A stretch of 63,479 nucleotides of DNA, counting the filler, from Octopus bimaculoides (lineage: Eukaryota), in the NCBI RefSeq assembly GCF_001194135.2. It is 3 parts of 3 records of this genome, joined end to end, with 100 filler letters (N's around TTAATTAATTAA, not from the genome) between each part and the next. Parts side by side here need not be neighbours in the genome. Positions count along the whole stretch, not along the records: positions 12,857 to 37,945 come from NC_068988.1; 2 more parts are not named here. One strand, 5' to 3'. Numbering within the stretch: position 1 is the stretch's first letter; the number at the start of each line of letters is the position of its first letter. The position numbers and the translations under genes are program-made. This document shows, one piece after another, positions 12,228 to 39,699 of the stretch. The notes under the pieces were generated by a model. It saw only the letters and a list, made by a program, of their open reading frames with translations. It had not been told where the DNA came from and did not search any database.

Positions 12228-12237
12228 ATACATACAC

Positions 12238-12274
<37 letters not shown>

Positions 12275-12706: not shown

Positions 12707-12756
<50 letters not shown>

Positions 12757-17326: not shown

Positions 17327-19029
17327 CATAAAAAAGCTACACGTTTGCATTATGTTATATATACAATAATAGTAGAGGACATTACCATATATATGTTTAC
17401 AAACCAAGGACGTTATATAGACTTCCTTGACTCAAGTTAGAGAAGGGGTGTGTATTATACACAAGGTTTCGGTTTTTCAGAGGTACAGCCCCCTAAAAAT
17501 CTCCTGCATATCATACTTAAGGGCAGACTATACTCAAGGATTTACGGTATATGAAAAACTGATTAAAATGCAGACTGACATGAATCTTTTAGAAAGAAGT
17601 GTTCATACTGTGTAAACACTTTACGTCATTATTATTTGCATTCACTTTCAATCATCTCGATTCAAGTCCTTATTTGAAGTTACAACCCTTTTAGGCAAGT
17701 CAGAGGACCACGTCTCACCCAACCATTCTGGTTTTTGGCATGGATGCCCTTCCTAACACCACACCTTCTCATTGCCAGGGAAATTTGTAGATGCTACCAC
17801 CTCAGTGCATGCTTATGTACCATCATCCACAGCATACTGAGCTTTCCTTCCAAAGGATTCTTGCAACAGAAAGACTACTTACTTAAACATTGGTAAGTGT
17901 TACTTCTACAAGCTGTAAAAGTGCAGATGCTCCAATCTGGTAAAACAAAAACTAGGGCAACACATAACAGAGTGTATAACAGCAGTGATGTGTACATTCA
18001 CTACCTCTTATTGGCCTTTCAAGGATAGCTTCTCCTTGGATGAGACACTGTTCAAAACCTCATCTTAATTCTTGTCCATGTGTGAGTCCAGACCAAACAA
18101 AAACTAAAGTACTTTGATTGGTTTATCTGTCCAGTGCTTCATGATGCTATGAACTTGCTTTATATTCAGCTGGTACCAGTTAGACAGAATTATCTGAGCA
18201 AGCTTGAGTCTTTCACACTTTCTCTCCAAGTAGTTAGCTGCATGCAATCCTAACATGCATCTAAATTGCTATCCCAATTTTCTACTAGCATCAAAGATGG
18301 AAATGTTTTCATGAAAACTTATAGGCAGTTGAAGAAATACAGATTTCTTACCTGCTTCAAGCCTTAAACATTCACTAGTCACTCGTTGCTCATGTCTTGT
18401 ACCACTTGCATCTCAAAATTCAGACCTTTTCAAAACATTACCAACAATCCCTATAATCCAGAGTAACTAAGAGATGTGTACACTACATAGTTGTCAAAAA
18501 AGAGTGTGATTGAGTATATTCAGGAAATCCTTGTCTTGTTGATGGCTACCAGAGCTATATCTAGTAATTTAAGGTCGTTAAACATGTGACTTGCTTCCAA
18601 GCTGATGCCAGACATCATGCATTTATGCATCCTACTCTAAATACAGCCATTTTGGTCAGAGAAGAGAAAGAGAGAGAGGTTGCTCATATTAGATGTGGAG
18701 AAGGGCAGGTAATTTGCTCTTTTTTAGCAGTTGAAGAAGGTTCCTCAAAAAGTCTCTCTAAAATGTTTATGTTGAGTTTTTTCAGTAGAAGCCCTGTGTT
18801 AAATGAGTGTCAGTACATGCTTGTATGAGTAGCCTTTTTGGAGGTATTTTGTACAGGAGTGTTTCAAAACCCTATCCTTGTATATTTTGATTAATTGTTA
18901 CCTCCTCCAACAAGTCATTGTTATTCTTTTGAACAGAAGTGAAGTTGATAAAGGTAAACTTGTGTATTTGCTTGTTGATTTTGTTGTTGTTCTTGTATTT
19001 GGTTTTTGTTTTCAATTTTTGCTGTGAAA

Positions 19030-19320
19030 GCATGTGGCCGAGTGTTTAAGATATTCAGCTCATGGTCATAAGATTGTGTGTTCAAAACCTGCCAGCACAT
19101 TGTATCCTTGAGCAAGACACTATATTTCCCGTTGCTTCAGTCTACTCAGCTGGTAAAAATGAGTAGAATCTATATATTCAAAGGGTCAGTCTTGTCACAC
19201 TCTGTGTCACACTGAATCTCCCAGAGAGTTACATTAAGGGTATATGTGTTGGTGGAGTACTCAGCGACTTACACGTTAATTACACGAGTAGACTGTTCCA
19301 TTGATTGGATCAGCTGGGAC
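19030..19320 (+). mobile_element. Diverged CORE-type SINE sharing its 3' half with family A
   Basis: tRNA-like head TGGCCGAGTG..., CORE-like gtatccttgagcaagacact...gttgcttcagtctactcagctg, then the family A 3' half (caaagggtcagtcttgtcacactctgtgtcac...). Confidence 0.65.
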
Positions 19321-19807
19321 GTAATGGGGATGTTGCTAGTAGGGGTTACTTTATTCAGCTATTACAGTGGAGGAAGCAGTGGTGATGGTGGCAGTGCTAT
19401 TGTCATTGTTTTTGCTATTCTACCTCACCCCTCCTCTTCATTTTCACAGGTATTCTTGTCTTTCTTGCTATTGTTGTGACTATTGCTGTGTCATAAAACT
19501 GAAGTTGTCAGGAAGCTCTTTCTATTAAAAGTAAGGAAAAGAGAGTTGCTGCCATTGCTGGTCCCTTTATTTTGGTCTTTATTGTTGTAATTCTTCTTTT
19601 TCTTTTTTTGCTGTTGTTGCTGTACAGAATCCCGTTTTGGCAAGTGATGGCTTGTGAGGGATTGCTCCTTGCTCAGTCAGTGTTGCCTCTCACCACTCCT
19701 GTTGCTGGAATAGTTAACATTGTTGACATTTTTATAGGATGTTTGTTTGCTAAGCACAGACAATGGCTGTGTTTTCCTTAATTAGTGAAGTGTCTTTAAA
19801 CCCTCAC

Positions 19808-19868
19808 TTTTCTGAGTATGTTGTGAACAAACTCAAATCATTAAATCCAAATTCGTATGAGAAAAAGT
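19808..19868 (-). CDS. Candidate small minus-strand exon, unassigned
   Basis: Acceptor ttgtttcttcAG and donor AAA|GTGAGG; 61 bp; one open frame (FFSYEFGFNDLSLFTTYSE). No homology recognised. Confidence 0.25.
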
Positions 19869-20188
19869 CTGAAGAAACAATTATAGACATGTTGACTTAT
19901 GATAGGCATGATTTCTGTTACTTGAAGATGATGATGATGATGGTGGTGTTAACAACAACAACATTTATAAAGTTAATAAAGTATTTTTCTTTTTAGTGAA
20001 ATATTTTAATGAAATTATTTTAGAAATAAAAAAGAAGATACTCTGATACCAGTAGTCATACTTGCTGTTGATGGTCTGGCAATAAATTTTTAACGAATAG
20101 AATATTGTGGGATAAAATGATGCAGCTGCCACTGCTACTGCTGCTATTACTACTGCTGCTGCTGCTGTTGTTATTGCTATTGTTGTTG

Positions 20189-20226
<38 letters not shown>

Positions 20227-20228
<2 letters not shown>

Positions 20229-20432
20229 GGTGGTGAGCTGGCAGAATTGTTTGCACACCAGCAAAATGCTTAGCAGCATTTTGTCCCTCTTTGTTCTGAG
20301 TTCAAATTCTTCCTCAGTTGACTTTGCCTTTCATCCTTTCAGGGTCAATGAAATAAGTACCAATTGCATACTGAGGTCAATATAATCGACTAGCCCCTCT
20401 CCAAAAATTTCAGGCCTTATGCCTTTAGTAGA

Positions 20433-20471
<39 letters not shown>

Positions 20472-20481
20472 GATTATTATT
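20227..20481 (+). mobile_element. Family B SINE (Meta-domain-like core gcctttcatcctttcggggtcgataaaataagtaccag), (ATT)n tail
   Basis: Head aaggcggtgagctggcagaatcgttagc and B-box-like gagttcaaattcc. Further copies at about 21077-21328 (+), 21540-21705 (-), 21708-21927 (+), 22250-22520 (-), 44096-44325 (+), 52946-53160 (+). The Meta assignment is from memory. Confidence 0.75.
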
Positions 20482-21889
20482 GAGTGAGAGAGCAGTACAT
20501 GTCATCAAATTGACACTGGGGTACAAATATATGAAGCCCAATATATGCATGATGACTACCCGTCTGATAAGGGTACATCAGGCACATGCATCACAACCAT
20601 ATGTACACGACATGGTGATCTCATATCAAGGTAAATAGTGCATGACCTTGCAGGTGGGGCCCAGTTAGAATTTTCTTCAGTTCAAGTAGCTCATCTCACT
20701 CGATAGGTTCCTGAATAAGAGTTGTTAAAAGGTGTTGAATGAAATACCAATGTTTCCATAGGTAAATTATTCAAATCCCAAAGAATTCCTCTCAACACAT
20801 GGCTATGATGCTCTCCCACTACTTCTGCTCATGATCAGAGATGCACATATCATCAACCACTAAGGGACATGCTCAACTGGTTATAGTGAAACAACTGACA
20901 GGCAAATCTGTGGTATTGAACAGAATATTTGCTATAACCCCTCTTTTATACCAAGAAAAAACATGTACATGATAACACTTGCAATCAGTTAAGATCAGAA
21001 GCCATGAGAGCCAGTGCCTGGTACTTTATCATCATCATCATCATCATCATCATTATTATTTTTTATTTTTTTCTTCAAATCAGCAAGCTGGTAGATTTGT
21101 TATCATGCCAGACAAAATGCTTAATGGCATTTCTTCTGGCTCTTAATGTTCTGAGTTCAAATGCCACTGAGGTTGATTTTGCCTTTCATCCTTTCAGCAT
21201 CAATAAAATAAGTACGAGTAAAATATTGGGGTTGATGGTATTAACTTGCTATCTCCTCAAACTTGTTGGCCTTGTGCCTAAATTAAAAAAAAATATCATG
21301 ATCATGATAATCATTATTATTATTATTAACACACCTTAGCATGTGTAGAAACTAAAACTTCAATGAAATTATTGGTGATGTGCTATCACCTTGGTACATA
21401 TAACACCATGTCTAGAGCAGGCATCAATATTTGACTTGGACAATGCTGTCAGTGCATCGTTAATAATTTTCTTGTTATTACTTCTTGCGAACTTCACTAG
21501 GAAATGTAATAATACCAATAGCAACAGTAATAATAAAATAAATGTTTCAATTTTAGGTACAAGGGTAGTAATTTTAGGGGTAGGGAAATAGGTGATTATA
21601 TTGACCCCACTGTCTGACTGACTGGTATTTAATTTTATCAACCTTGAGGAGATGAAAGGCAAAGTTGACTTTGGCAGGCTTTGAACTTGGAATATAAAGA
21701 GATGTTATTCTTAGCAGCATTTCAACCATCTTTATACTCTGAGTTCAAATTCCACTAGAGTAGACTTCGCCTTTCATCCTTTCAAGGTTGATGAAATAGG
21801 TATCAGTTGAATACTGGGGTTGATGTTATCAACTTACATTTCTGAAATTTCTGGCTTTGTGCCAAAATTTAAAAGCATTTTTACTATTG

Positions 21890-21926
<37 letters not shown>

Positions 21927-22644
21927 TTTTATCATTATTATATGTTTGACTTTTGCTTTGTATTTGTACAAGTTGGCACCAAGTCTCACCCAGAGACCTC
22001 AAGAGACAACAAGTTAGAAGTTCATGTTGGTGTTATACCTAGGGTGTCATATATTTGGTTTTTTACATAGTATTGTTCTAGAGAATGTTTAAGAAAACAT
22101 AAGAAAATTATCAGTTTGTTTTAAAATTTGAGTTACATAGACAGTATTTTACATAGGATATGGGCAGTTCCCATGAGCACTGTTTTTTAAATTTCTGCCA
22201 TTTTTGGGGTTTCCTGGTATCTGAGTTAGGTAGCAATCAGCCCCTTTTTATTATTATTATTATTAAGCAATTTTGGGGAGGGGGTATGTTGATTACATCA
22301 ATCCCAAATTTATTTTTAGAAATTAGGCGAGGAGTTTGCGACGACGGCTGCTGCTTATTTTATCCACCCTGAAAGGATGAAAGGTGAAGTCAATCCCAGC
22401 GGAATTTGAACTCAGAATACAAAGATGGTCAAAATGCCACTAAGCATTTTACCCAGCATGCTAACAATTCTGCCAGTTCACTGCCTTATCAACAGTGATA
22501 ATAATAATAATAATAATCGTTGTTCGTTCACTTTTACATACTGGCATGGATTAGAAAACTATATAATTTAGGATATTGTTGGATACTTTTTCTTTTGCTG
22601 ATACTTGCCCGATTTTCAAGTAAGGAATCACATATCTTTGAAGG

Positions 22645-22987
22645 TGTAGTGACGTCATATGGCGCCAAAGGTACAGTCGCCATTACTGCATTTTTATCCA
22701 CGCATGCGTGGAGTTCAACATCTAAGCGTTTCCGTTTTTTTCATTCTCTTTTCTCGCCAGCCTGCGAAGAAGCAAGACGGGTCCTACAAGCTCTCTCATT
22801 GAGCGTGGTCGTACCAAGCTGTCTCTCCAACAATTCAACTCTGGGGACAGCTCACAACTACATTCCAGCATCTCAGCAACCAGTTTAAGGCTGCCTATTT
22901 CATCCATAAATAAATATTGTTGTGTTGATAGGTTCAGAGTTCTGCGTTCCGTTTATTCCGAATTTAATATAGGAAAGCAGGTGTACA
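22645..22987. other. CpG-rich island inside the CpG-poor block; solo-LTR-like or regulatory
   Basis: Begins TGTA and ends TACA; contains TGACGTCA, ATGGCG, ACGCATGCGT and AATAAA near 22909; 7-bp direct repeat aggtgta at 22642 and 22979. Confidence 0.35.
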
Positions 22988-23521
22988 CCTAATGGTGTAT
23001 AACCACTATTCTTAAAAAGGTGTGAAGCCAGCAGATGATTTATTGACTGACAAAGTAACAGCAACATCACTACTCACTGATGACCAAGAAGTGCAAATAT
23101 AAAAAAAAACACACACACACATACAAACACCCATCCATCTTCATACAAATGCACACAAATATGTACTTATATTATTTATATACTAGCAGAGATACCCGGC
23201 ATTGCTCATGATTAAAATGGCATAAGTTTTTATTGTTTTACTTGTTTCAGTCACGTGACTGCAGCCATGCTGGGGCACTGCCTTTAGTTGAGGAAATTAA
23301 CCCCAAGATTTATTCTTTGTAAGTCAAGTACTTATTCTATCAGTGAACTTTTGCTGAACCACTAAGTTACGGGGATGTAAACACAGCAACATCAGTTATG
23401 AAGTGATGGTGGGGGTACAAACACAGACACAGACACACACAAATATACGTATATATATATGACAGTCTTCTTTCAGTTTCCATGTACGAAATCCACTGAC
23501 AAAGCTTTGGTCAGCCTATAG

Positions 23522-23556
<35 letters not shown>

Positions 23557-23679
23557 GTACGTGTATATGTTTATATATATATGCATATATATGTAAATAT
23601 ATATACGTGTGTATATATATATATATATATATATGAATATTTTTTTTTTTTACTGTTCCATCCACAGATTGCACTTGTA

Positions 23680-24028
23680 ATGTACGAATCAGCCGGTCGA
23701 TTTCTCTGTGAAAGCATTTGAAGAGGCCAGGATGATGCAAGCAGGGCTCAAGAGACATTTAAGGAAAAAGGTGAAGACTGAGAAGGTGAATGACAAGGAC
23801 CTTTTTGTGTGCACAGTCTGTGACAGACCATGTCTGTCCTTGGCTGGCCTCAAATCTCACCTGCGAACCCATGGAAAACAAACCTCACCCAGCTATTCTG
23901 ATTATATGTCTGTGCACACGTTTGAATGTGGTGTGTGCCAGAGGGTTTGCAAATCCAATGGGGGTCTTAAAAGACATGTTAGGATCCACAATGAGCAGAA
24001 CTTACTTGCAGGTATTGGTAGTGCAAAT
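23680..24028 (+). pseudogene. Two tandem C2H2 zinc fingers, probably the C-terminus of an RTE-type ORF2
   Basis: FVCTVCDRPCLSLAGLKSHLRTH and FECGVCQRVCKSNGGLKRHVRIH preceded by [13 protein letters not shown]; no TGEKP linker; runs into a gap. Confidence 0.6.
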
Positions 24029-24846
24029 NNNNNNNNNNNNNNNNNNNNNNNNNNNNNNNNNNNNNNNNNNNNNNNNNNNNNNNNNNNNNNNNNNNNNNNN
24101 NNNNNNNNNNNNNNNNNNNNNNNNNNNNNNNNNNNNNNNNNNNNNNNNNNNNNNNNNNNNNNNNNNNNNNNNNNNNNNNNNNNNNNNNNNNNNNNNNNNN
24201 NNNNNNNNNNNNNNNNNNNNNNNNNNNNNNNNNNNNNNNNNNNNNNNNNNNNNNNNNNNNNNNNNNNNNNNNNNNNNNNNNNNNNNNNNNNNNNNNNNNN
24301 NNNNNNNNNNNNNNNNNNNNNNNNNNNNNNNNNNNNNNNNNNNNNNNNNNNNNNNNNNNNNNNNNNNNNNNNNNNNNNNNNNNNNNNNNNNNNNNNNNNN
24401 NNNNNNNNNNNNNNNNNNNNNNNNNNNNNNNNNNNNNNNNNNNNNNNNNNNNNNNNNNNNNNNNNNNNNNNNNNNNNNNNNNNNNNNNNNNNNNNNNNNN
24501 NNNNNNNNNNNNNNNNNNNNNNNNNNNNNNNNNNNNNNNNNNNNNNNNNNNNNNNNNNNNNNNNNNNNNNNNNNNNNNNNNNNNNNNNNNNNNNNNNNNN
24601 NNNNNNNNNNNNNNNNNNNNNNNNNNNNNNNNNNNNNNNNNNNNNNNNNNNNNNNNNNNNNNNNNNNNNNNNNNNNNNNNNNNNNNNNNNNNNNNNNNNN
24701 NNNNNNNNNNNNNNNNNNNNNNNTGGAGCCCGGTGCAGCCATCTGGTTCACCAGTCCTCAGTAAAATCGTCCAACCCATGCTAGCATGGAAAGCGGATGT
24801 TAAACGATGATGATGATGATGATGATACATACATACATACATACAC

Positions 24847-24905
<59 letters not shown>

Positions 24906-25525
24906 TACATACATACATATATATATAGATATAGATATAGACATATATATATATATACATACATACATACATCTATATATATAAAAGTGAAACGATAACT
25001 GTTACTCTGTCGAAGATTTCATTTTATTTCTTTGAGTTTTGAGACATAATATGGAACCAGTGCCAATGTTGCATTGCTTTAATAAAAAAAATTTTACATG
25101 TTGACACTCCTGGGGTCTCATAATATTACAATGTAAAATTTGATTTGATTTGGTTGAGCTGTTTGAGAATGCATTGGGAACAGACAGAGATACACAGGAT
25201 TATATTTATATATATATAGATGATGGGCTTTTTTCAGTTCTTGTTTATCAAGTCAACACAGAGGGCTTTGTTTGGTCTGTGGCTGTAATAAAGTCATTTG
25301 CCCGAAGTGCGGTACTGAATCAAAGGTCATTTTGTTGGGAAGCAACCTTCTTAACCATACTGCTATGCTAGAGCATTGCCAATGATTTTTTTATTATTTA
25401 TAGTGAACCTTGCAGAGAGAATAAGTGAGACCAACAACAATAATAACAACAATAATAATGATAATAATATTACTACTAGTAGTAGTAGTAGCAGCAGCAG
25501 CAATAGTTATAACGACAAAATTATT

Positions 25526-25659
25526 TCATCCAATAATTTTTTCGCCTATATTGTCTTGTTTAAACAAGATATTGTTGATGCTGTGTATAACTCCATTGAG
25601 GACAGAAAAATCAGTCCCAGAGACCTTTGCTTCAGTTTCACCATCGCTTATAATGAAAT
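25526..25659 (-). CDS. Coding exon completing the FAS1 domain (H2 motif), ending in TGA
   Basis: Strong minus-strand acceptor ttttctttttgttttcgtccAG. Reads (D)FIISDGETEAKVSGTDFSVLNGVIHSINNILFKQDNIGEKIIG*. AKV...D....NGVIH.I..IL is the conserved FAS1 H2 motif. Confidence 0.75.
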
Positions 25660-26043
25660 CTGGACGAAAACAAAAAGAAAATAGAGAAAACAGTTATAAC
25701 CAAATCAGTGAATGCAATTGAAACAATATCAAATAGCCATCTCTGTGTCATGCTAGATGTATATACATCATTGAAAGGCAAGCTGCCATAATTTTTGTCT
25801 GAGAGAAAATCTTTCCATAGAGATGGTGTGTTAAAAAGAAAATATATATCAAAATTAAACACAATCATTGCAACAGTGATTTGCGAGACCATTAGACATC
25901 TTGGACCTTGTGAAAAAATGTACTCATTTGTCACCTGCCTTAACAAAAGATGGTTACTTTTATTTCGTGCTGATTGAAGTGCATATATGAATATATATAA
26001 GTACATATATACATGCATATACATGTGTGTGTGGGGGTGTACT

Positions 26044-26089
<46 letters not shown>

Positions 26090-26985
26090 TGTGATTAAGA
26101 AGACATACCAAGTTACTTATGTACAAGGTTGTCCTTACATACAGGCATGCCTTTTGCATACAGGCATTCCTTTTGCATACAGGCATATCACCTGTATCAG
26201 CTGAATATTCCTAATCATAAAAAGCACCTGTGCCATGTAAAAGCATCCATGCCAGTGCTGCATAAATGCATCCAGTACACTCTGTAAGGTGGTTGGCATT
26301 AGGAATGGCATCCAGCTGTAGAAACCATACCAAAATAGATATGGAGCCTGGGCAACTCTTCAGCTGGCCAGCTCCTGCCAAACTGTTCAACTCATGCCAG
26401 CATAGAAAACAGACATTGAATGGTACTGATGATACTGAAATTGCCCTCCAAATTTCATAATTCTTTGCCTTTCATATAACTTAGTAGGTATGAGAAATTA
26501 CAGAATATATTCTGGATATGCGCATTACCTATGTCAGAACAAGTTGGGTAGTATTTATGATAATAAATTAATAACTGGAAAGTAATAAAATTGAAAAGAA
26601 ATTGCAACTGTGCAAAATAAAATAAAATTGACTAAATAATGTACAACAGCTTAAATCCATGCATATCTCTCTCTCTCTTTCTCTCTCTACACACATAGAC
26701 ACATATTCAAAAGAATCTTGCACACACATAATGTGTGTGTATGCATATATATATATAAACATATACATACATACATGCATGAATGCAAATACACACATAC
26801 ACAAATACACACTCATAATCACACAAAAAGGTGAGTAAGCCGAAACTGTAAAATCAGTCAACTATTCATTGTGAAAGTTTAGTAAGCATGTATTCTACTA
26901 ATGTTAACCTGGATTACTCAGTACTTTTTAGTAGAGTGTATGCTTATTAAACTTATATAATGAAAATTTGACTGATTTTTATAAT

Positions 26986-27048
<63 letters not shown>

Positions 27049-27735
27049 CAAGGTGGTATCAAAAAGTTCCCAGACTAGTGCTGTAGCATGCCAACAGATG
27101 GTGCAGTTGCATGCACAATGAGAGCTAGCAGTGACCTTCATGAGACAGTGTGCCAAGTGACATTGCTGTGTTTACTTTGCAAGTTGTGAAATTTGTGTTT
27201 TTGTAACCATGTGTATGCTGTAGTCTACGATTTTGTCATGGGAAGGAAGTTGGAACAAAGAGCCAATGCGAAATTTTCCATTAAACTTGGGAAGTCTGCT
27301 ATAGAGACATTGAATATGCTTTGGCAAGCTTACAGCAATGAGGCAATGGGTTGTATGCAATGTTTCATGAGGCACGAATGCCTCAAAAGTGGAAGAACAT
27401 CTCTGGAAGATGATGAGCGATCAGGAAGACGTGCCATGAGTATCACCCCTGGAAATGTGGAGAAAATTCATCAGCTTGTGCATGAGGACCTTCAGAAGAC
27501 GATCAACAATATTGCTGATGTTGTTGGTCTGTCATATGGGTCTGTGCAAGCAATCCTAATGTCTGAATTGAACATGCGGCATGTCTCTGCCAAGTTTGTC
27601 CCCTGCTTGCTGACCACTGAGCAGAAAGAATATCATGTCGAAGTCTGTCAAGATCTCCATCAGTGTGCTGCTGACAGCCCATCCTTCATGTCAAGGATCA
27701 TCCCCAGTGACAAGAGTTGAGTCTACGGTTACAGC
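27049..27735 (+). mobile_element. mariner 5' half, truncated by a family C SINE
   Basis: TA|caaggtggtatcaaaaagttcccagact terminus in (TA)n; ORF ...EQRANAKFSIKLGKSAIET...LEDDERSGR...VSAKFVP...IIPSDKS*VYGY. Confidence 0.85.
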
Positions 27736-27968
27736 CCGTCATATGTGTGTGTGTGTTCATGTGTCTGTTTTTGTCCCCCACCATCGATTGACAACTGATA
27801 TTGGTGTGCTTACATCCCGTAACTTAGCAATTCGGCAAAAGATACTGATAGAATAAGTACTAGACTTACAAAGAATAAGTCCTAGGGTCGATTTGTTCGA
27901 CTAAAGACAATGCTCCAGCTTGGCGACAGTCAAAAAATGACTGAAACAAATAAAAGAATATATATATA

Positions 27969-28001
<33 letters not shown>

Positions 28002-28247
28002 NNNNNNNNNNNNNNNNNNNNNNNNNNNNNNNNNNNNNNNNNNNNNNNNNNNNNNNNNNNNNNNNNNNNNNNNNNNNNNNNNNNNNNNNNNNNNNNNNNN
28101 NNNNNNNNNNNNNNNNNNNNNNNNNNNNNNNNNNNNNNNNNNNNNNNNNNNNNNNNNNNNNNNNNNNNNNNNNNNNNNNNNNNNNNNNNNNNNNNNNNNN
28201 NNNNNNNNNNNNNNNNNNNNNNNNNNNNNNNNNNNNNNNNNNNNNNN

Positions 28248-28302
<55 letters not shown>

Positions 28303-28309
28303 ATGTATA

Positions 28310-29183
28310 GCTCCTACCTCTGCTGGTAACAAAGGACCTGTCGGTCAGAGTGAAAGGTGAAAGGCGAACAGCCATGCACCGGCAGTGAAACATGGGCTGT
28401 AACTCTGAGGACATGCGTAGGCTTGAAAGAAATAAAGCTAGTATGCTCTGCTGAACGTGTAATGTCAGTGTGCAAACATGACAAAGTGTAAGCACCCTGA
28501 GAGAAAAGTTGGACATAAGAAGCATCAGATGTGGTGTGCAAGAGGAACAACTGTGCTGGTATTGTCATGTGTTGAATATGGATGAGGACAACTGTGTGAA
28601 GAAGTGTCACACCCTAACAGTGGAAGGAACCTGTGGAAGAGGTAAACTCAGGAAGACATGGGATGAGGTGGTGAAGCACAACCTTTGAACGTTGGGCCTC
28701 ACAGAGGCAATGATAAGCAACTGAGACCTTTGGAGATATGCTGTGCTTGAGAAGACCTCGCAAGCCACGTGAGATTGTAGTTGTGGCCAATGCCAGTGTC
28801 ACATAACTGACCCATTTAAAAGCACTCTTCAATCGTCGGGCAATATGCTGTGCTTGTGAAGACCTGTTGAACCAAGTGAAACTGTAGTTGTGACTGATGC
28901 CAGTGCTGCCTGAGTGGCACCAGTGCTAGTGGCATGTAAAAAACACCATTCGAGCAAGGCCAATGCCATTGCTGCCTGACTGGGTCCCATGCTGGTGACA
29001 GGTAAAAGGCTCCTACTACACTCTCAGAGCTGTTGGCGTTAGGAAGGGCATCCAGCTGTAGAAACCTTGCCAAATCAGATTGGAGCCTGGTGCAGGCCCC
29101 TGGCTTGCCAGTCCTCAGTCAAACTGTCCAAGCCATGTCAGCATGGAAAGCGGACATTAAATGATGACGACGACGACGATGAT
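28310..29183 (+). mobile_element. RTE-clade LINE 3' end with 3' UTR and (GAT/GAC)n tail
   Basis: MRRLERNKASML...QLCWYCHVLNMDEDNCVKKC...GRGKLRKTWDEVV; the UTR carries ggaagggcatccagctgtagaaac. Confidence 0.8.
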
Positions 29184-29439
29184 ATTCAAGAGTTAAGGAA
29201 TGGAGTAGATAAAATCCAGACTGCATATGAAAGTGGTTAATGTCCAGGCAAGGTGTATACCACAGGCTACTCTTCAAAGTCAAGGTTATCTTGATTAAAT
29301 GAAGTTTACACTATCATAAGGAGGCCCATGTTAACACACAGAGGATTTGATCAGAATAAACCACTATTGTTCAATAGGAGCTAAGCCTGGACAGTATAAT
29401 ATGGAAGACAGGTTGCTACCAATGCAATATATCCCACCT

Positions 29440-29740
29440 CTCCATATTACTAATGGATCCAAAGAAGCATTACAATTCAGTACCAGCATCTTTGTAGGAA
29501 TTGCCAGGGGCTCCAAATCGTGGTATTTTCTCAGAGTTTACTCCTGAAGCCTTTCCCATGACTGGGTATAGCTGCAAGGCAGCAGAGATTTAGAGTCAGG
29601 GTTCTCCTGGCCCTAGATGGGCCAAGGTGCTTCCCTGGCCCATCTAGATGGGTGCTGCCCTGGCCCATCTAGATGGGTGCTGCCCTCACTACCCAGGCTA
29701 ACGAGTTCCATCTGCCAGTTTGACTTGCTAATTAATCCAC
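29440..29740 (-). mobile_element. RTE-like 5' UTR fragment with a 25-bp tandem duplication
   Basis: ctgccttgcagctatacccagtcatgggaaaggcttcaggagtaaac resembles RTE 5' UTRs as I recall them; the unit ccctggcccatctagatgggtgctg occurs twice (29633-29682). Confidence 0.4.
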
Positions 29741-30251
29741 AGCTGTGACTCTGGGTTTGAGTAGACCTGAGAACAGTAGTGACTAGGATTGGTTCCATAC
29801 TCCTCAAAACCATGGAACTTCTAGATCAGGGTCCCACTACTAGATATGAGCAGGAACCCAAAAGTAACTGGAAATGTTCTCTGTGGGACAAGTCCATTGT
29901 AGTTTAGGCTTCCACTCCTAGAAGCCACTTGATGCTACCCTCAGACAGCAGTCTGTCGACCAGCACCATTGATTGAGGTTGTACTGCCACATCGTGCAGA
30001 GCCTCTCCCCAGTTCGTCAATGACTGAAATGAAGAAACAGCATGCTTCCATGGTCCAATGCATTGTTTCAGAGAATACTCTGAAGGCAATAAAAGTGTAA
30101 ACATGTAAAACTAAGTGAATAAAAATAATACTGCAAAATTCCAGTTTCTTTGCGCACCCTCTCATATAGTCATAACCAGGACAAAAGCAGCAAAATATAA
30201 ACTAAATAAAACAGGACAATGAAATAAAAATAATTAAATGAAATGGCTTAC

Positions 30252-30363
30252 CATGCTGATGAAATGTTAGATGTATGATGTTTTGGGCTATTCCAATTAA
30301 ATTCATACCATCCATAAAGCCGGCCTCGTAATATATGTTAGATATAAAGGTCTTGATAAGTAT
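30252..30363 (-). CDS. Coding exon of a FAS1 (fasciclin)-domain protein, candidate nested antisense gene
   Basis: Minus-strand acceptor ttctgttccAG and donor CATG|GTAAGC; 112 bp, phase 0-1. The only open frame reads ILIKTFISNIYYEAGFMDGMNLIGIAQNIIHLTFHQH. Joins in phase to exon 25526-25659 (G+AT = Asp). Confidence 0.7.
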
Positions 30364-30681
30364 CTGGAACAGAATTTGTGATGCAATTGAAAAAATATTT
30401 ATGTGTGTGGTGTGTATGTGTATGTAAATGCATGTATGTACACACATACACACACACACATGCACACAAGAGTATTCTTATTTGTTTAAAGTGATAAATG
30501 CAGATGTAAAGTTAAGTGAAATATGTATGGTGATGTTGCTAAATGCAAAAGAGAAATCTTATTCTATTACCTTCATTGATTGTTTAATGATCCTATAATA
30601 TTTCAGGAAAGATTCCTCTTTACAAAAGAGAAGAAAGAAAGTAACCAAAGAGTTCAAAGGTACATGTTGTTACCGATATAC

Positions 30682-30749
<68 letters not shown>

Positions 30750-30801
30750 CATTTTTGGATTTGGTTTGCAAGATTTTTTATGTGATTTCGTGTGTTGAAG
30801 C

Positions 30802-31062
30802 ATATTCTGTTTTGTCTGGGGAGAGTCATTTTCTTATTGTGCCTTAAAATTTAACACACTCACCGGTAAAATTTCCACTTATTTCTTATTTTTATTTTCC
30901 TAAAATTTTCGTCTTGCAACCTTATCAATAGTCTACACTATTGAAAAGGTTGCAAGAGGCAACGAAAATTTTAGGAAAATAAAAATAAGAAATAAGTGGA
31001 AATTTTACTGGTGAGTGTGAAGGCACAATAAGAAAATGACTCTCCCCAGATACAACAGTATA
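30802..31062. repeat. Long near-perfect palindrome (MITE or inverted PLE junction)
   Basis: tctggggagagtcattttcttattgtgcctt...tgcaacctt.tcaatagt is mirrored around a centre near 30934. Confidence 0.8.
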
Positions 31063-31113
31063 TATATATACATATATATATATATAATCCAGATAATAGG
31101 ACAAAGATATACT

Positions 31114-31394
31114 TTAACACATCTTTAATGGTCAGTTACAATTGTTTCTGTATCACCTCTGCTTGCAACACCAGCTTATGCAATATTCAAAAAGAAAATT
31201 AACGTAATATTTGCAGTTTTAGACATTAGAGTGGCCCAATCTAAGAGTGTACCTTCAATGCAAGTCTGATAAAGTGCCACTCTAATATCTAAAACCACAA
31301 ATATGTAAATTTTCACTTCAAATAGTGTGTTAACTGGCATTGGAAGCAGAGTTGGTAAAAAAACAATTGTATCTGATTATTAAAGATATGTTAA
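31114..31394. repeat. Diverged palindromic MITE-like element
   Basis: Outer arms ttaacacatctttaat.gtcagttacaattgttt / aaacaattgtatctgattattaaagatatgttaa; inner arms 31217-31235 / 31276-31294. Confidence 0.7.
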
Positions 31395-31460
31395 AATATT
31401 TCTTTGTTTTATTATTTGGATCATATTTTACTCTTAGCTACACCCACACAATAGTTTTAC

Positions 31461-31577
31461 CTTCATGTAACTAAGATTTTCTATACCTGTAGAATTTTGG
31501 TATTCACTTGAAATCCAACAGTGCTCATAGTCCAGAACTAAGGTTGAGTGCTTCTCTGGCAATACCGTATTTATACC
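31461..31577 (-). CDS. Probable upstream exon of the same FAS1 gene (degenerate H1 region)
   Basis: Donor ATGAAG|GTAAAA gives phase 0, matching exon 30363. Reads GINTVLPEKHSTLVLDYEHCWISSEYQNSTGIENLSYMK; spacing fits FAS1 GL..TL...FTVFAPTNEAF...LK but residues are degenerate. The acceptor is weak (alternative start 31555). Confidence 0.4.
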
Positions 31578-31588
31578 CTACTAGGACT

Positions 31589-31624
<36 letters not shown>

Positions 31625-31740
31625 AAAAATGGGTAGAGATGGCTTCTTGGAGGGGATAATTTTTATTTTAATCTTAATAATAATGTTTACAGTTAGTTAC
31701 TCTGATATGAGTTTCAAGCTTAAAATAGCTGTTTTCAAAC

Positions 31741-34700
31741 TCTTTTCTTTATTCACCATGCAAGAGTTAAAAAAATGAAGAGAAGACGAAGCAAGGACAG
31801 ACAAACAGACAAGGTGTCGGGGATCGAATGAGAGTAACAGAGTGAAGGATGAACATTAAAAATTCAAGACAATAAATAATGATAAAGTAAAACAATGGAT
31901 GATTAACAAAATGAAGCAGAGGACGTGGTTGACACAAACCACGTTCTTACACTGAAGACTTTATTTCTCCTTTTATGTTCTCGCTCAAACAGGTTCTTTC
32001 CCTCTCAACATATTTGCTACAGACTTCCATCTTTTTTGAAACACACTGTGTGACAGGCATTTCTTCTCCAGCCTTATTTTTCTTTCTATGTGGAAAACGA
32101 AAAAGTTAACTAACCCAAGGCTGGAGATAAAAATGCCTGTCATGATCCCTTTCACTCTTGTCTTCCATACTACCTCTTTTGCAATAGTTACTACCGAGAG
32201 AAAACAAGCCTGCTTTTCCCTTTTCGGGGAGGGTGGCAGAACAGTCTTAATTATAGATTTGGTTGACAGTTGTACTCTTCTCAGATGTGACAGCAGGTGT
32301 TCGACATAAGCCCAGAGTTCTGAAATCTTTGGACATTGTACAATTGCGTGCAGAACAGTTTCACTGTCCTGCCCGCATCTTGGACAAGTCAGCGAGGACG
32401 AAGAACCATGCCTAAAGAGCTTATCCTGAACAGGTAAAGCATCTCTGTAACACTGCCATGGCAGGGACATCTGGTAATTGTCCATAGGCCCTGGCCTAAA
32501 TGTTCTTTGGAACAGGCTGACGTGTTGACCTTCATCAAAGTCCAGGTCGTCTACCAACCCTCTATAGAAGGACGAGGTGGAACCCCCATCACCAGCATTG
32601 CCCTACTGGGAAAGAAGCATGAGTGCCTGACTACATTCTGCATGCCAAGCCCCCAACCTTGGTCTATGCTTAATCCATGGTTCCAGTTCAGTAAAGGATG
32701 TGAACCGTGGAAATAACAGTTTGACAAATGGAGACCACACCTGTTCACTGTTCAGGTAAAGCCAGAGGTGCCTAAGCCTCAACACATGTCTGTGCATTTT
32801 TAGCCATGGCATCCCTAGCCCACCATTCTGTGGTTTTTGGCAGCAGATAGAGTGCCTTACAAGAGGTCCCTCCACAAAAAGCAGAAGAGCATGCATTCCA
32901 ACTTGTTCATCCATGAATCAGGGCAAGGTATGACGGTCAGGCGGTAGGTAATTACAGATGCGATAAACACACGTGCAACCTCTGCCCTCCCTTTCAGCGA
33001 CAGCTTCTGCTCAGACCAAGTCTGAGTTAGGAGAGCAACTTTGCTCGCTACCTTGCTCCAGTTCTTCTCTATCTGAAGATCTGGACCTAATCATATTCCA
33101 AGCATTTTCACCGGACCGTCCGTCCAACGTCCCATGATGCTGTTAGACAGCATCAACTTGCTCCTCCAGGTTCCGAGTTGCAAGCTGACCGATTTATCCC
33201 AGTTAATTTTTGCTCCTGCCACCGCTTCATAATCCCTTATAGCCTCACCTATCCACTGTAGGCCTCGTCTACCCAGGATACGATGACAATGATGTCATCT
33301 TTGTATGCTGAAACTGACTTTCTGCACCCTAGATCTTGTGGAGTGCCCCTCATAGCCTCCAACTTCTTCAGCAATGGCTCGAGGGCCAAAACATACAGAA
33401 GCGGAGAGAACGGACACTCTTGGCGCACCAATCATTTAATGCAGAATGGCTCCAAAAAGAAACTGTTCACCTGAACTATCCATTCAATGTGGCTATATAA
33501 AGTGGTGAGCCACCCATGGAAGGTCGGGCTGAAACCAGCCACCACAAGGACCACCGCCAGATACTGATGGTCAATCCTATCAAATGCTTTTGATTGTTCT
33601 AAATGGACCATAGCTCCACCCTTGCCAGGAATTCTATTTACCCTCTCTAAGGCATAGCGGAGAAAGTGGAGATTGTTGCGAATGCTCCTGCCTGGGATGG
33701 CACATGTTTGTGCCTCCCCAACAAGTCCACTCATGACCCGTGCCAACCTTTTTGCTAAAACCTTGGCCAAAATCTTCATCTCTGTATTAAGCAGAGTGAT
33801 GGGCCTAAAATTATCAGTTATGTCTCCCTTGTTTGGATCCTTTCTTAGCAGCATCACAACTCCCCAGTTCACAGACTTGGAAATCCTCCCATTTTGCTGG
33901 CAGTTGGTATAGACGCATGCAAGTAGGTGCCCAAACAAGTCTGGCATACTACAATACAGTTCATAGAGTAGACCATCTAGTCCCAGCGACTCATTCCTGC
34001 CGCAATCTGATAACACTTCCTCCACCTCCATAGCTGTGATCGACCCTTCACAAAATTCTGCTTCCTACCCTGAGAGACATGGCGATCTGGCAAGGAAGTC
34101 TGCGGGGTCCTCCCTGTGTTCTGGTCCACCACCCCTCCCATAAAGCTGGGTGAAATGCTCATGAAACACCTTGCATATCTCGGGTTCATTTACTGAATGA
34201 CCATGTGGGTCCATCAAAGACAGTATGGTTGAGCTGTTACCATGTTGGCTTTCTACCACTCGAGCCCATCTGGCCAAGTTGATTCTTTCTTGTCCCATTC
34301 ACGTATCTTAGTCCTGACAATGCACCTTCGGGTTTAGCTTTGAGATGTTACTTGAGCGCCAACCTCACTGCTAAAACCTTGGATGCAGAGCCTGACCTCA
34401 TTACCTCTTCAAGTGCCTTAGCTAGCTCTCTTTCTACTCTATTTCTAGTACTAGCTAATTCCTTACTGAACCTAATTGACTCAAATTTTATGGCTCTAAG
34501 ATTTGAGGGCTTACCACCATTTATTATTTATAATGGATCCGGTTAATGCCCTCATAACTAGCTGTCTAATCCGGTTCCTGTAGGCTTGACAGTTCAAGAG
34601 CGACTTGTTTAGATTCCAGTAACCTGATCTCTGTCTACACATGCTATCTAAGTCAAGAGTACAGGTCACAAATTCGTGATCACTGTAGTTGACAATGTGG

Positions 34701-37150
34701 TGTTGTGGACAACTAACTATTTTCTTATCCTTACTTCTTACAATAATCCTGTCTAAATAAAATCTGGACGACTTATTGTTTTTTGCCCATGTCCACAAAA
34801 GAACGTCTGGGTGGCCCAGTCTGAATCAGTCTGCCACCTGAAAATGACTTAGCAGACTGCTGAGGCAAGGGTTTTCCCCTCCTATCTGGGTTTGAGACAA
34901 CACAATCTATACATGCATCACAGATTGTGTTAAAGTCACCTAACACTACTAAAATGTGCAACGTCACTAGAAAATTCTCTAGGCTTCTGAAGTAGTCTGA
35001 CTGTCCAGCTCCACAGGGAGCATAGACAGCCACCAACCTGAACACTTTACCACTGCTGTGTGTCAAATCCAAAATGACCAACCTGCCTTTTGGATCTACA
35101 AAGACAGTTCTTATCTCTAAATCCAGATTTTTCCTGAGTAGAACTACAACACCTCCTCCCCATCCAGGTTGGCTTGGAGAAATAAATTTCTCATAGCCAT
35201 TTAAGAGGGGTGAAAATGCCTGCAGCCCACTCTGTCTGGTTTCGGTAGCGACTATTAAATCTAAACTATGCAACCTGAGGTCGTCAAGGAGGCAGCTTTG
35301 CTTCCAATCCGAACCCAGGCCATGTACATTTATACAACCTATTTTGAGCAAGAAAATAAAAGTTGACTTACTGTTTTAAGAGGAGGGAGGATGTTAAACC
35401 CTCCTCTTTCCTGTCTTCAGGTGCTGTAGTTTGTGGGGTTACCCTTAAAAATTGTCTGTATAGATGGTTCGAAAAATTCATTTACAAAGGCCACATGTCC
35501 TCTGAAAATAATTTATTTATTTCGCTATACTCCACATTATCAATGGTGAAAAATTCGATATATGGAGAGACCAGTAAATTTTCAGCTATTTTATATATTT
35601 TTGCTGATTTGGCCTGTTTTATTTTTTTCCTTTAGAAAGGCATTTTTTGAATTTATAGCAGTTATATTTTTTAGTCTTTTCTTTGGTGATTGGTGGGGAG
35701 TGTGTGCGTGCTTGTGGATGAGTGTGTGTTTGTGGGTGCTTGTGTGTTTGTGGGTGCATGTGTAGGTGTGTGTGTGCTTGTGAGTATCTCTGTGGGTGTG
35801 TATGTACTAGTGGTTGGTGTATCAGATGAGGAGGGTCTTTTCTCTTTCTCCTTCTTTTTGGTAGGCCAACAGTGACCCACTCTTGGTTTTCTGTCCCCTC
35901 CCGCAGTGCTGGCTGTTCCTTGACTGGTGGGGGCACCGCAGTTGTTGTCTCTAGTGGTGTGGTTGTTTTCTCTTCTTTTTCCTTCCTCTTTTCGCATTCA
36001 GCTCGAATGTGGCCCTTTTTTCCACATTTGTAGCAATGGGGCTTACATCCTTCTACAAGGACCTTCAAGTTAACAGCTTCCCCAATTATTATGGAATTGG
36101 GGATCTCTTCTAAGTCTAGGGGCATGGCTTGAATTATTACGTGTCTAGCCTATCCAATTTTGGAGGTGGTATTTGGTGGCATGGAGGATAGTAATTTTAT
36201 CCTCCAGGCTCATTATTATGGTGGCCACTAGCCAAGCTACGTCAATTTCTGGTGGTATCTCCGCCACCCTTACCTTAGATGTTCCTCTTCCAAGGTAAGT
36301 CAGCAGGGGAACCACTTCTGTTGATTTTAGTGTGGCTGTGGAGTGTTCCCTAGCTTTCTCATCGCTAGGAAAATGAAACTCCACAGTTCCAAAACGTCTG
36401 CCCCGACAATATAAGTTGTCTCTTGCCAGATGGGCCTCAGACATTTTTCAGTTTTCTCTCTTTGTTAACAAAGTCGATCTTTTTAGTTTTCCTTTGGGTA
36501 ATATGTGAAATCTCAGTTGGAGGGACCAATTTAATATCATGTCCCTCCTAGAGTAACAGACCTTTGTATTTTCCCAGTTCGTTTTTGTCAAATTTTAGGT
36601 CTTCCTTGGTACAAGTTGAAGCAGCTGCAAAATTCACAGTATTTCTTGACATTTCCACCTGTTCAACAAGCACATTTTTTCCTTTTGCCTGTTTAAAAGG
36701 TACATTTCTTTCCTCAGCCTGTACAACAGGCACATTTCCTTCTTCTGCCTGTACAACAGCCATGTTTATTTCTTCCACCTGTTCGACAGGCATATCTTTC
36801 TTTTCCATTTGTTCCATTGGTACACCTGTCAATAAGGCTTCCAAAATGTTTCCATAGATTAGCTCTTCCTCAGAATAAATGAGTGACAAATTCATATTTG
36901 CAAGATTATTTTCCCCTTTGAAACGAGTGGGAAGGGAAAAAATAAATCTGCTACAAAGCAGAAAACAAGTAGTGTTTTAGAAAAACACAAAACAAACAGT
37001 TCACAGTAACAATATCAACAATATCATTAAACTTTCACCGGCGCGAGAAAAAACATGCCTGAACAATGCCATAGCCGTTTTCAAACTGAAAAATGTATGT
37101 TTTAGTGGTTGCTTAAATAGAAAAGGTATTTTTCTTACAAGTATACAGAC
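31741..37150 (-). mobile_element. Near full-length Tx1/L1-clade LINE with decayed ORF1 and ORF2
   Basis: ORF1 zinc knuckle CYKCGKKGHIRAEC (about 36060-36000); ORF2 APE start MLKIGCINVHGL (35351); RT motifs NFRPITLLNTEMKILAKVLAKRL, VRQECPFSPLLYVLALEPL, AYKDDI; C-terminal CPRCGQDSETVLHAIVQC; AATAAA at 31753-31748. The 5' boundary is approximate. Confidence 0.9.
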
Positions 37151-37689
37151 AAAAAAAATATACACAAAAAAGGGAAAAAATAAATCTGCTACAAAGCAGA
37201 AAACAAGTAGTGTTTTAGANNNNNNNNNNTATATATAAAATACAAAAGCATGTGTGAAGAAGAAGAACAAGAACAACAACAACATGGAAGAAAAAGGCAA
37301 AGAAGTAGAAGAAGAAAGTAAATGAAATAAAGAAAAACTGAAAGTAAATATATGAATAAAAATAAAGATAAGAGTAAAGATAAGGCTAATAGTAATTGAA
37401 AACAGTGAGGAGGAGAGTTAAGTCTATCAAGAATAAAGTAATGGAATATTTTGGAGGGGATAATGTTGTGTTCTTGTTGAATGGTGACCTGTGTGGTGCC
37501 TATTGATTTGAGGTCACCTATTCAGTTCTCACAGGTGGTATGGTGTGCAAACACGCACACACATACAGACACTCACACACACCGACACACACACACATAC
37601 ATATATTGAGAAAAAGGAGACAGTCAGAATTTTGGATAATACTTTATTAGTGCTTTCGTTCATTTATAATATTGGATAATACTTTAACA

Positions 37690-37945
37690 TTTTCGTTCAT
37701 CATCATCATCATCATCATCATCGTTTAACGTCCGCTTTCCATGCTAGCATGGGTTGGACGATTTGACTGAGGACTGGTGAAACCGGATGGCAACACCAGG
37801 CTCCAGTCCGATTTGGCAGAGTTTCTACAGCTGGATGCCCTTCCTAACGCCAACCACTCAGAGAGTGTAGTGGGTGCTTTTACGTGTCACCCGCACGAAA
37901 ACGGCCACGCTCGAAATGGTGTCTTTTATGTGCCACCCGCACAAG
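37690..37945 (-). mobile_element. Family D repeat (RTE 3' UTR or partner SINE)
   Basis: Matches 28990-29183 with (GAT)n tail; related copies at about 17690-17835 (-), 24724-24826 (+) and 26230-26440 (+). Confidence 0.75.
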
Positions 37946-39615: not shown

Positions 39616-39651
<36 letters not shown>

Positions 39652-39656
39652 CACAC

Positions 39657-39699
<43 letters not shown>

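What the first reader, a model, noticed from the sequence alone, without database searches (positions are those of the whole stretch)
25526..31577. Candidate FAS1-domain gene nested antisense inside the serotonin transporter intron
Seen in sequence: minus-strand exons 30363-30252 and 25659-25526 have canonical AG/GT sites and matching phase (CAT G + AT TTC). They splice to ILIKTFISNIYYEAGFMDGMNLIGIAQNIIHLTFHQHDFIISDGETEAKVSGTDFSVLNGVIHSINNILFKQDNIGEKIIG*. The supplied ORF track shows the first exon only inside a noise ORF and misses the second. Established knowledge: NGVIH.I..IL is the H2 motif of fasciclin/FAS1 adhesion domains (Fasciclin I, TGFBI, periostin, stabilin). A third exon (31577-31461) may supply a degenerate H1 lacking the usual APTNEAF. 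Inference: SERT needs many more exons downstream of 2710 and none is visible before 25.5 kb, so this gene sits within a SERT intron on the opposite strand, which raises possible transcriptional interference or co-regulation. I do not know whether this arrangement has been described.
Basis: partly seen in the sequence, partly recalled or inferred. Interest (0 to 1): 0.75.

Follow-up and report, generated by a model that had tools for sequence, protein, structure and literature searches.

The report
Last exons of octopus FAS1 gene
The two minus-strand exons are real, but they are the last two coding exons of an already annotated Octopus bimaculoides gene for a small secreted protein with two fasciclin (FAS1) domains, and nothing supports the claim that it sits inside a serotonin-transporter intron.

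Summary
They have AG/GT sites and a phase-1 junction, and they give 81 aa ending in TGA. That peptide is 100% identical to the C-terminus of RefSeq XP_014769687.1 and XP_014769686.1 of Octopus bimaculoides ("TGFBI ig-h3 / periostin-like"; UniProt A0A0L8HSV9, "FAS1 domain-containing protein"). The window piece is 100% identical to chromosome CM046608.1.

The gene has 7 coding exons over 52 kb; the piece holds only exons 6 and 7. The full 356-aa protein has a hydrophobic N-terminus read as a signal peptide, followed by two FAS1 domains (Pfam 124 bits; AlphaFold model matches TGFBIp and periostin).

The true exon 5 carries a canonical TIFAPTNEAF motif and lies beyond the piece's edge, about 15 kb upstream.

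The assembly gap (28002-28247) lies in intron 6 within a (TA)n run. Its two flanks are colinear with the gap-free O. sinensis ortholog.

The SERT nesting is not supported. The SERT exon came from an unrelated piece, the plus strand of this piece has no SNF-family match, and no enclosing gene is annotated in three octopod genomes.

Verdict: an ordinary, already known gene.

The parts
30252..30363 (-). Coding exon 6 of 7 of the O. bimaculoides two-FAS1 gene (residues 276 to the first base of codon 313 of XP_014769686.1). It encodes the middle of FAS1 domain 2, including ISNIYY at the usual 'YH' position.
   Evidence: Read directly. tblastn of P0001/P0034 gives 100% identity within the exon. It equals L001 57144-57255. 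The splice sites are conserved in O. sinensis.
25526..25659 (-). Coding exon 7, the last one (residues 313-356 plus stop TGA at 25528-25526). It encodes the C-terminal strands of FAS1 domain 2 with the H2 motif NGVIHSINNIL.
   Evidence: Read directly. tblastn gives 100% identity. The end of the gene range on record, L001 61981, equals window 25526.
25660..30251 (-). Intron 6 (about 4.6 kb; the length is uncertain because of the estimated 246-N gap at 28002-28247). It contains (TA)n and (CA)n microsatellites, SINE-like repeats and an HTH-bearing transposase-like ORF (27193-27720, +).
   Evidence: GT at 30251-30250 and AG at 25661-25660. The gap is flanked by (TA)n on both sides. The intron is colinear with O. 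sinensis intron 6 across the gap.
30364..37945 (-). The 3' part of intron 5. The whole intron is about 15.3 kb in L001 (41790-57143). Exon 5, which carries TIFAPTNEAF, lies beyond the piece's edge.
   Evidence: Exon 5 maps to L001 41625-41789. The piece ends at L001 49562, next to a 1786-N gap. There is no Fasciclin hit in any minus-strand frame of 30200-37945 apart from exon 6.
31985..36895 (-). Decayed non-LTR retrotransposon (LINE) in intron 5, in the same orientation as the gene. It has a CCHC zinc-knuckle ORF1, an AP endonuclease, a reverse transcriptase and zf-RVT, broken by frameshifts and stops. It is not part of the gene product.
   Evidence: Pfam: RVT_1 62.7 bits, Exo_endo_phos 26.8, zf-RVT 31.8, zf-CCHC 17.3. 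ORFs. It is absent from O. sinensis intron 5, which is 2.2 kb.
31461..31577 (-). It is rejected: this is intronic sequence.
   Evidence: It is not in the gene model, is not conserved in O. sinensis and adds nothing to the Fasciclin score.
25390..25395 (-). AATAAA 131 nt downstream of the stop codon. It is a candidate polyadenylation signal; this is inference only.
   Evidence: Pattern scan. No transcript data were available.

Best explanation
Window 30363-30252 and 25659-25526 (minus strand) are coding exons 6 and 7, the last two, of an annotated Octopus bimaculoides gene on chromosome CM046608.1. Window position w corresponds to record position w + 85,056,267. The gene has 7 coding exons over about 52 kb. 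It encodes a 356-aa protein (XP_014769686.1; isoform X2 XP_014769687.1 is 234 aa) with a hydrophobic N-terminus read as a signal peptide, followed by two FAS1 (fasciclin) domains and nothing else. The two exons encode the C-terminal 55% of FAS1 domain 2, including the H2 motif. Shown here: the identity to the gene model, the exon map, the domain content, the fold, and conservation of exon structure in Octopus sinensis and Argonauta hians. Inferred: the product is a soluble secreted extracellular-matrix or cell-adhesion type protein. It would act as other FAS1 pairs do, through protein-protein or ligand binding at the FAS1 beta-wedge and helical surface. It is a stand-alone gene in a repeat-rich region, not nested in another gene.
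For: The exons and junction were read directly. The peptide is 100% identical over 81/81 residues to P0001 residues 154-234. P0001 is XP_014769687.1 and P0034 is XP_014769686.1 / A0A0L8HSV9, 'FAS1 domain-containing protein'. The piece is 100% identical to L001 (CM046608.1) and has the same gaps. The seven exons are mapped. Pfam Fasciclin on P0034 gives 124 bits, E 5e-36, two domains, with domain 2 at residues 220-344. PDB sequence hits: periostin E 6e-20, TGFBIp E 1.5e-19. The AlphaFold2 model has pLDDT 87.7. Foldseek matches TGFBIp (TMq 0.66, E 7e-21), periostin (TMq 0.68) and the Fasciclin I pair. Orthologs: O. sinensis 85% identity with the same 7 exons and splice sites; A. hians 52% identity with the same exon ends. 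The loci are colinear across the gap. N-terminal 20 aa have mean hydropathy +1.6; the C-terminus is not hydrophobic and there is no RGD.
Against: No transcript or junction-read data could be consulted, so expression rests on the RefSeq model and on conservation. Constraint is weak: dN/dS against O. sinensis is 0.66 for the whole CDS and 0.57 for exons 6-7. That fits a fast-evolving secreted protein but would also fit relaxed selection. The 81 aa alone are below Pfam's threshold. The function of the protein is untested.
Confidence: 0.96

Rival explanations
1. One reading: the FAS1 gene lies antisense inside an intron of the serotonin transporter (SLC6A4-like) gene, with possible transcriptional interference.
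For: In my copy 1-12800 is N.
Against: The scan program's note on the finding says the window was joined from unrelated pieces, so the adjacency is artificial. No SLC6 signature motif occurs in any frame of the piece or of the 72-kb locus L001. Pfam on all three plus-strand frames of 12857-37945 finds only a pogo-type transposase and a C2H2 finger, with no SNF match. The gene lists for the orthologous loci show no overlapping gene in O. bimaculoides (72 kb), O. sinensis (52 kb) or A. hians. In A. hians the only neighbour is a downstream same-strand LIM/Ig-like_KY gene.
Confidence: 0.02
2. The two exons are a chance ORF pair or a dead pseudogene fragment that gene predictors picked up because of the NGVIH motif.
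For: The Pfam score of the 81 aa alone is weak. dN/dS is rather high, 0.57-0.66. The surroundings are full of decayed transposons.
Against: The reading frame, all seven exons and the splice sites are intact in three octopod genomes, including Argonauta at 52% identity. The full protein gives 124 bits to Fasciclin and a confident two-domain model. dN is lower than dS.
Confidence: 0.02
3. One reading: exon 31577-31461 supplies a degenerate H1 lacking APTNEAF, making an unusual FAS1 domain.
For: AG and GT sites and an open frame exist at those coordinates.
Against: The gene model uses a different exon 5 with a canonical TIFAPTNEAF. With the true exon 5 it is 63.9 bits and covers profile 9-121. 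The stretch is not conserved in O. sinensis.
Confidence: 0.01

Closest known systems
The gene itself: O. bimaculoides XP_014769686.1 / XP_014769687.1 (RefSeq 'transforming growth factor-beta-induced protein ig-h3 isoform X1/X2', earlier 'periostin-like'; UniProt A0A0L8HSV9 'FAS1 domain-containing protein')
   Same: Identical sequence and the identical splice junction. The window piece is the same DNA as CM046608.1.
   Different: Nothing differs.
Vertebrate TGFBIp (beta ig-h3) and periostin
   Same: The FAS1 fold and a tandem FAS1 pair. They are the best sequence and structure matches in the PDB. The H1 (FAPTNEAF) and H2 (NGVIH.I) motifs are shared.
   Different: Those proteins have an N-terminal cysteine-rich EMI/CROPT domain and four FAS1 domains, and TGFBIp has an RGD motif. 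The octopus protein has only two FAS1 domains, no other Pfam domain, no RGD and 3 cysteines. Identity is about 22-23%. The RefSeq name reflects similarity, not orthology.
Insect Fasciclin I
   Same: The FAS1 domain pair architecture (1o70, Foldseek E 1e-17), and an extracellular location.
   Different: Fasciclin I has four FAS1 domains and a GPI anchor. The octopus C-terminus is not hydrophobic, so no GPI signal is apparent. The inter-domain geometry differs (rmsd 15 A over the pair).
Short two-FAS1 'periostin-like' / 'sll1483-like' proteins of bivalves, gastropods and echinoderms, and bacterial fasciclin-domain proteins
   Same: About 290-330 aa with two FAS1 domains and 25-34% identity. They make up most of the homolog list and align over the full length.
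   Different: Outside Octopoda identity drops to 34% or less. No close ortholog outside Octopus and Argonauta appeared among the top 120 hits.

Membership tests
FAS1 / fasciclin domain (Pfam PF02469) | Profile match above the curated threshold | tested here: met
The full protein P0034 scores 124 bits (cut-off 22) with two domains. Exons 5-7 alone score 63.9 bits.
FAS1 / fasciclin domain (Pfam PF02469) | Conserved H1 motif (T.FAPTNEAF) near the domain start | tested here: met
   TIFAPTNESL (domain 1) and TIFAPTNEAF (domain 2) are present in P0034. T100, F102, P104, T246, F248, A249 and P250 are invariant in the 30-sequence alignment. The domain-2 H1 lies in exon 5, outside the window piece.
FAS1 / fasciclin domain (Pfam PF02469) | Conserved H2 motif (NGV.H.ID.VL) near the domain end | tested here: met
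   NGVIHSINNIL lies in exon 7. N334, G335, V336 and H338 are nearly invariant. Domain 1 has a variant, LSVVHLIDGL, with H197 invariant.
FAS1 / fasciclin domain (Pfam PF02469) | FAS1 fold (alpha-helical arm plus beta wedge) | tested here: met
   The AlphaFold2 model has pLDDT 87.7. Foldseek matches TGFBIp, periostin, Fasciclin I and single FAS1 domains with TMt up to 0.89.
TGFBI / periostin orthologs | Four tandem FAS1 domains | tested here: not met
   There are only two Fasciclin stretches in 356 aa. The orthologs in O. sinensis (355 aa) and A. hians (366 aa) also have two.
TGFBI / periostin orthologs | N-terminal cysteine-rich EMI/CROPT domain (and RGD in TGFBIp) | tested here: not met
   No Pfam family other than Fasciclin matches. 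The protein has 3 cysteines in all and no RGD. The modelled N-terminus is a long helix.
Nested antisense gene within a host-gene intron | Host-gene exons on the opposite strand on both sides of the nested gene, on one continuous sequence | tested here: not met
There is no SNF/SLC6 match on the plus strand of the piece. No overlapping gene is on record at the locus in three octopod genomes.
Expressed protein-coding gene | Transcript or junction-read support | not testable with these tools
   No RNA-seq data are available here. The indirect support is the RefSeq model and the conserved exon structure.

The most novel reading that the evidence does not exclude
The gene may be an octopod-restricted, fast-evolving branch of the short two-FAS1 secreted proteins. 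Identity is 85% to O. sinensis and 52% to Argonauta, then 34% or less to anything else. dN/dS is about 0.66. Its name 'TGFBI' would then hide a lineage-specific extracellular function, for example a specialised matrix, adhesive or ligand-binding role. This rests only on the hit list and one pairwise dN/dS. It says nothing about nesting.
Probability: 0.25. Interest if true: 0.2.

Novelty: already known. Interest (0 to 1): 0.07.

Why it matters
It matters little beyond quality control. The gene is already in RefSeq and UniProt. The interesting part of the claim, antisense nesting in the serotonin-transporter gene, came from joining unrelated pieces into one window. The case is a useful caution in two ways. 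Adjacency in a composite window is not synteny. A motif-guided search for 'the next exon' in repeat-rich cephalopod introns can pick a spurious AG...GT open frame: the real exon 5 is about 15 kb upstream, beyond a LINE insertion and two gaps.

Tried and rejected
1. The word-indexed protein search with the 81 aa found nothing. The exhaustive HMMER search was needed to find the gene model.
2. The PDB sequence search with the 81 aa gave only marginal TGFBIp hits. The top hit was a spurious designed Kelch-like repeat protein, caused by the 'VLNG.I..' similarity. The Kelch reading is rejected because the full protein is unambiguously FAS1.
X-masked frame translations were used instead.
4. The look-up of encoding contigs with isoform X2 (P0001) was not on record. 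Isoform X1 (P0034) worked.
5. I searched the upstream minus strand of the piece (30200-37945) for further FAS1 exons and found none, only LINE domains.
7. The SLC6 motif regex and the Pfam plus-strand scans were both negative.
8. Rfam and tRNA scans of the piece found nothing.
9. The literature search found no paper citing the accessions, and the 'octopus' plus 'fasciclin' search listed no title on an octopus FAS1 gene.
Full report
**Observation**

On the minus strand, 30363-30252 is preceded by ttccag and followed by gtaag. 25659-25526 is preceded by gtccag and ends in TGA at 25528-25526. The junction is phase 1 (CAT G|AT TTC). The proposed third exon, 31577-31461, also has AG and GT sites and an open frame. 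The piece occupies 12857-37945 and has 38% G+C. It contains N runs at 13706-13715, 14879-14926, 24029-24723, 28002-28247 and 37220-37229.

**Is it more than chance?**

- The 81 aa alone give a sub-threshold Pfam Fasciclin hit: 16.7 bits, E 0.009, cut-off 22, covering profile positions 67-121 of 123. The hit spans the splice junction.
- The word-indexed protein search found nothing.
- The exhaustive HMMER search over 1.84 billion representatives returned P0001, 234 aa. It is 100% identical over all 81 residues in one stretch, at its residues 154-234. Many multi-FAS1 proteins followed.
- P0001 is RefSeq XP_014769687.1 of Octopus bimaculoides ([quoted passage not shown], earlier "periostin-like").
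- Its cluster mate P0034 is isoform X1, XP_014769686.1, 356 aa, also UniProt A0A0L8HSV9 "FAS1 domain-containing protein".

**Locus**

- P0034 is encoded on CM046608.1 (assembly GCA_001194135.2). L001 is 85,071,793-85,143,773, reversed, and the gene range is 10001-61981.
- The window piece is 100% identical to L001 in reverse orientation and has the same gaps. Window 28248-37945 equals L001 59259-49562, 24724-28001 equals 62783-59506, and 15526-24028 equals 71981-63479.
- It follows that window position w is record position w + 85,056,267.
- tblastn maps seven coding exons in L001: from 10001; about 26574-26711; from 34051; about 39139-39279; 41625-41789; 57144-57255; 61848-61981.
- Exon 5 encodes ...KQNLTIFAPTNEAFYNLPAGTLEKLENNVPLLTQ. 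It lies about 15.3 kb upstream in L001, beyond the edge of the piece, which ends next to a 1786-N gap.
- tblastn of P0001 against the piece finds only exons 6 and 7.

**The third exon**

- It is not in the gene model.
- Nothing in O. sinensis intron 5 aligns to 31461-31577.
- A direct control was run. The true exon 5 plus the 81 aa scores 63.9 bits, E 2e-17, covering profile 9-121.
- The idea of a degenerate H1 is therefore wrong. The domain has a textbook H1.

**The assembly gap**

- 28002-28247 lies inside intron 6, so frame continuity does not matter. What matters is whether the two sides belong together.
- Both edges of the gap are (TA)n, which suggests an assembly break within a microsatellite. 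The same 246-N gap persists in the chromosome-level assembly.
- The O. sinensis ortholog locus L002 has no N at all and carries the same seven exons.
- The window minus strand is colinear with L002 across the gap:

| Window (minus strand) | L002 (O. sinensis) | Identity |
|---|---|---|
| 30600-28513 | 34349-36416 | 85% |
| 27737-27376 | 39318-39679 | 90% |
| 27352-26507 | 40397-41218 | 81% |
| 25735-25465 | 41537-41804 | 91% |

- The join is therefore supported.

**What the gene encodes**

- Pfam on P0034 finds Fasciclin only: 124 bits, E 5e-36, two domains, the second at residues 220-344.
- A PDB sequence search finds periostin (E 6e-20) and TGFBIp (E 1.5e-19), aligned over residues 97-346.
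- An AlphaFold2 model built from a 30-sequence alignment has mean pLDDT 87.7 and pTM 0.76.
- Foldseek matches TGFBIp (E 7e-21, TMq 0.66, rmsd about 3 A over 286 columns), periostin (TMq 0.68), the Fasciclin I FAS1 pair, and single FAS1 domains with TMt up to 0.89.
- The N-terminal 20 residues are hydrophobic (mean hydropathy +1.6) and the C-terminus is not. There is no RGD and there are only three cysteines.
- From this I infer a soluble secreted protein made of a signal peptide and two FAS1 domains.
- It is a member of the FAS1 superfamily. It is not an ortholog of TGFBIp or periostin, which have an EMI/CROPT domain and four FAS1 domains. The RefSeq name is a similarity label.

**Conservation**

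- The orthologs are O. sinensis P0035 (85% identity, 355 aa) and Argonauta hians P0005 (52%, 366 aa). The next hits drop to 34% identity or less and come from crustaceans, bivalves, gastropods, echinoderms and many bacteria.
- The splice sites of exons 6 and 7 are conserved in O. sinensis.
- Argonauta keeps the same exon ends, LLTQ|ILIR and KKNG|F.
- Nei-Gojobori estimates against O. sinensis give dN 0.076, dS 0.115 and omega 0.66 for the whole CDS, and omega 0.57 for exons 6-7. Constraint is present but weak, as is common for fast-evolving secreted proteins.

**The nesting claim**

In my copy 1-12800 is N. The SERT exon near 2710 is therefore not adjacent in the genome.
- Independent checks agree:
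  - No SLC6 signature motif occurs in any of six frames of the piece or of L001.
  - Pfam on all three plus-strand frames of the piece (ORF segments of 28 aa or more) finds only DDE_1, HTH_Tnp_Tc5 and BrkDBD, which mark a pogo/Tigger-type transposase, plus C2H2 zinc fingers. There is no SNF match.
  - The gene lists of the three orthologous loci show no overlapping gene. In Argonauta the only neighbour is a downstream, same-strand LIM/Ig-like_KY gene.
- The nesting is not supported.

**Surroundings**

- Intron 5 holds a decayed LINE in the same orientation as the gene, at about 31985-36895. It carries RVT_1, Exo_endo_phos, zf-RVT and zf-CCHC. O. sinensis lacks it: its intron 5 is 2.2 kb, against 15.3 kb here.
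- Intron 6 holds microsatellites, SINE-like repeats and an HTH-bearing transposase-like ORF.
- Downstream of the gene lie a pogo-type transposase remnant and a C2H2 ORF that runs into a gap.
- There are no Rfam families or tRNAs in the piece.
- No paper cites the accessions.

**Verdict**

The FAS1 interpretation is right and the nesting interpretation is unsupported. The gene is already annotated, so the finding is ordinary and interest is low.

Noticed in passing
window 31985-36895 (minus strand): Decayed non-LTR retrotransposon in intron 5, in the same orientation as the gene. It has a CCHC-knuckle ORF1, an AP endonuclease, RT and zf-RVT, with frameshifts and stops. It is absent from the orthologous O. 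sinensis intron (2.2 kb against 15.3 kb), so it is an insertion on the O. bimaculoides side or a deletion in O. sinensis.
   Followed up: partly
window 36548-36895 (minus strand): ORF with a 30/60-nt tandem repeat (36653-36799) encoding repeated ...VEQVEE/VVQAEE... units, just upstream of the LINE ORF1. It may be the element's 5' region. No Pfam match.
   Followed up: no
window 15301-16305 (plus strand): Remnant of a pogo/Tigger-type DNA transposase (BrkDBD, HTH_Tnp_Tc5 and DDE_1 spread over two frames), about 9 kb downstream of the FAS1 gene's stop codon.
   Followed up: partly
window 23708-24028 (plus strand): ORF with C2H2 zinc fingers (zf-met and zf-C2H2 hits) that runs into the 695-N gap at 24029-24723, so it is cut off. 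It may be a transposon-borne or a cellular zinc-finger fragment.
   Followed up: no
window 27193-27720 (plus strand): 175-aa ORF inside intron 6 with only weak HTH matches (HTH_32, E 0.03). From memory it resembles the N-terminal DNA-binding part of mariner-type transposases; this was not confirmed.
   Followed up: partly
window 24724-24827, 29005-29184, 26230-26410, 37697-37942: Copies of a roughly 200-nt interspersed repeat (SINE-like) in both orientations. It has many copies in the O. sinensis locus too. ARAGORN finds no tRNA-like part.
   Followed up: partly
window 27960-28001 and 28248-28300: The 246-N gap sits inside a (TA)n run followed by (TG)n. (TA)n tracts recur through the introns (26980-27048, 30676-30747) and probably caused the assembly breaks.
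   Followed up: yes
L001 10001-61981 versus L002 10001-41743 versus L003 10001-20480: The same 7-exon gene spans 52 kb in O. bimaculoides, 32 kb in O. sinensis and 10.5 kb in Argonauta hians. Intron size differs about five-fold among octopods.
   Followed up: partly
P0034 versus P0035 (whole CDS): dN/dS is about 0.66 between the two Octopus species, and identity drops steeply outside Octopoda (34% or less). This is a fast-evolving secreted FAS1 protein whose 'TGFBI' name is only a similarity label.
   Followed up: partly
P0001 (isoform X2), residues 1-30: RefSeq isoform X2 starts at Met123 of isoform X1, inside FAS1 domain 1. It would lack the signal peptide and half a domain, so it looks like a prediction from an alternative or truncated 5' end rather than a functional variant.
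   Followed up: no
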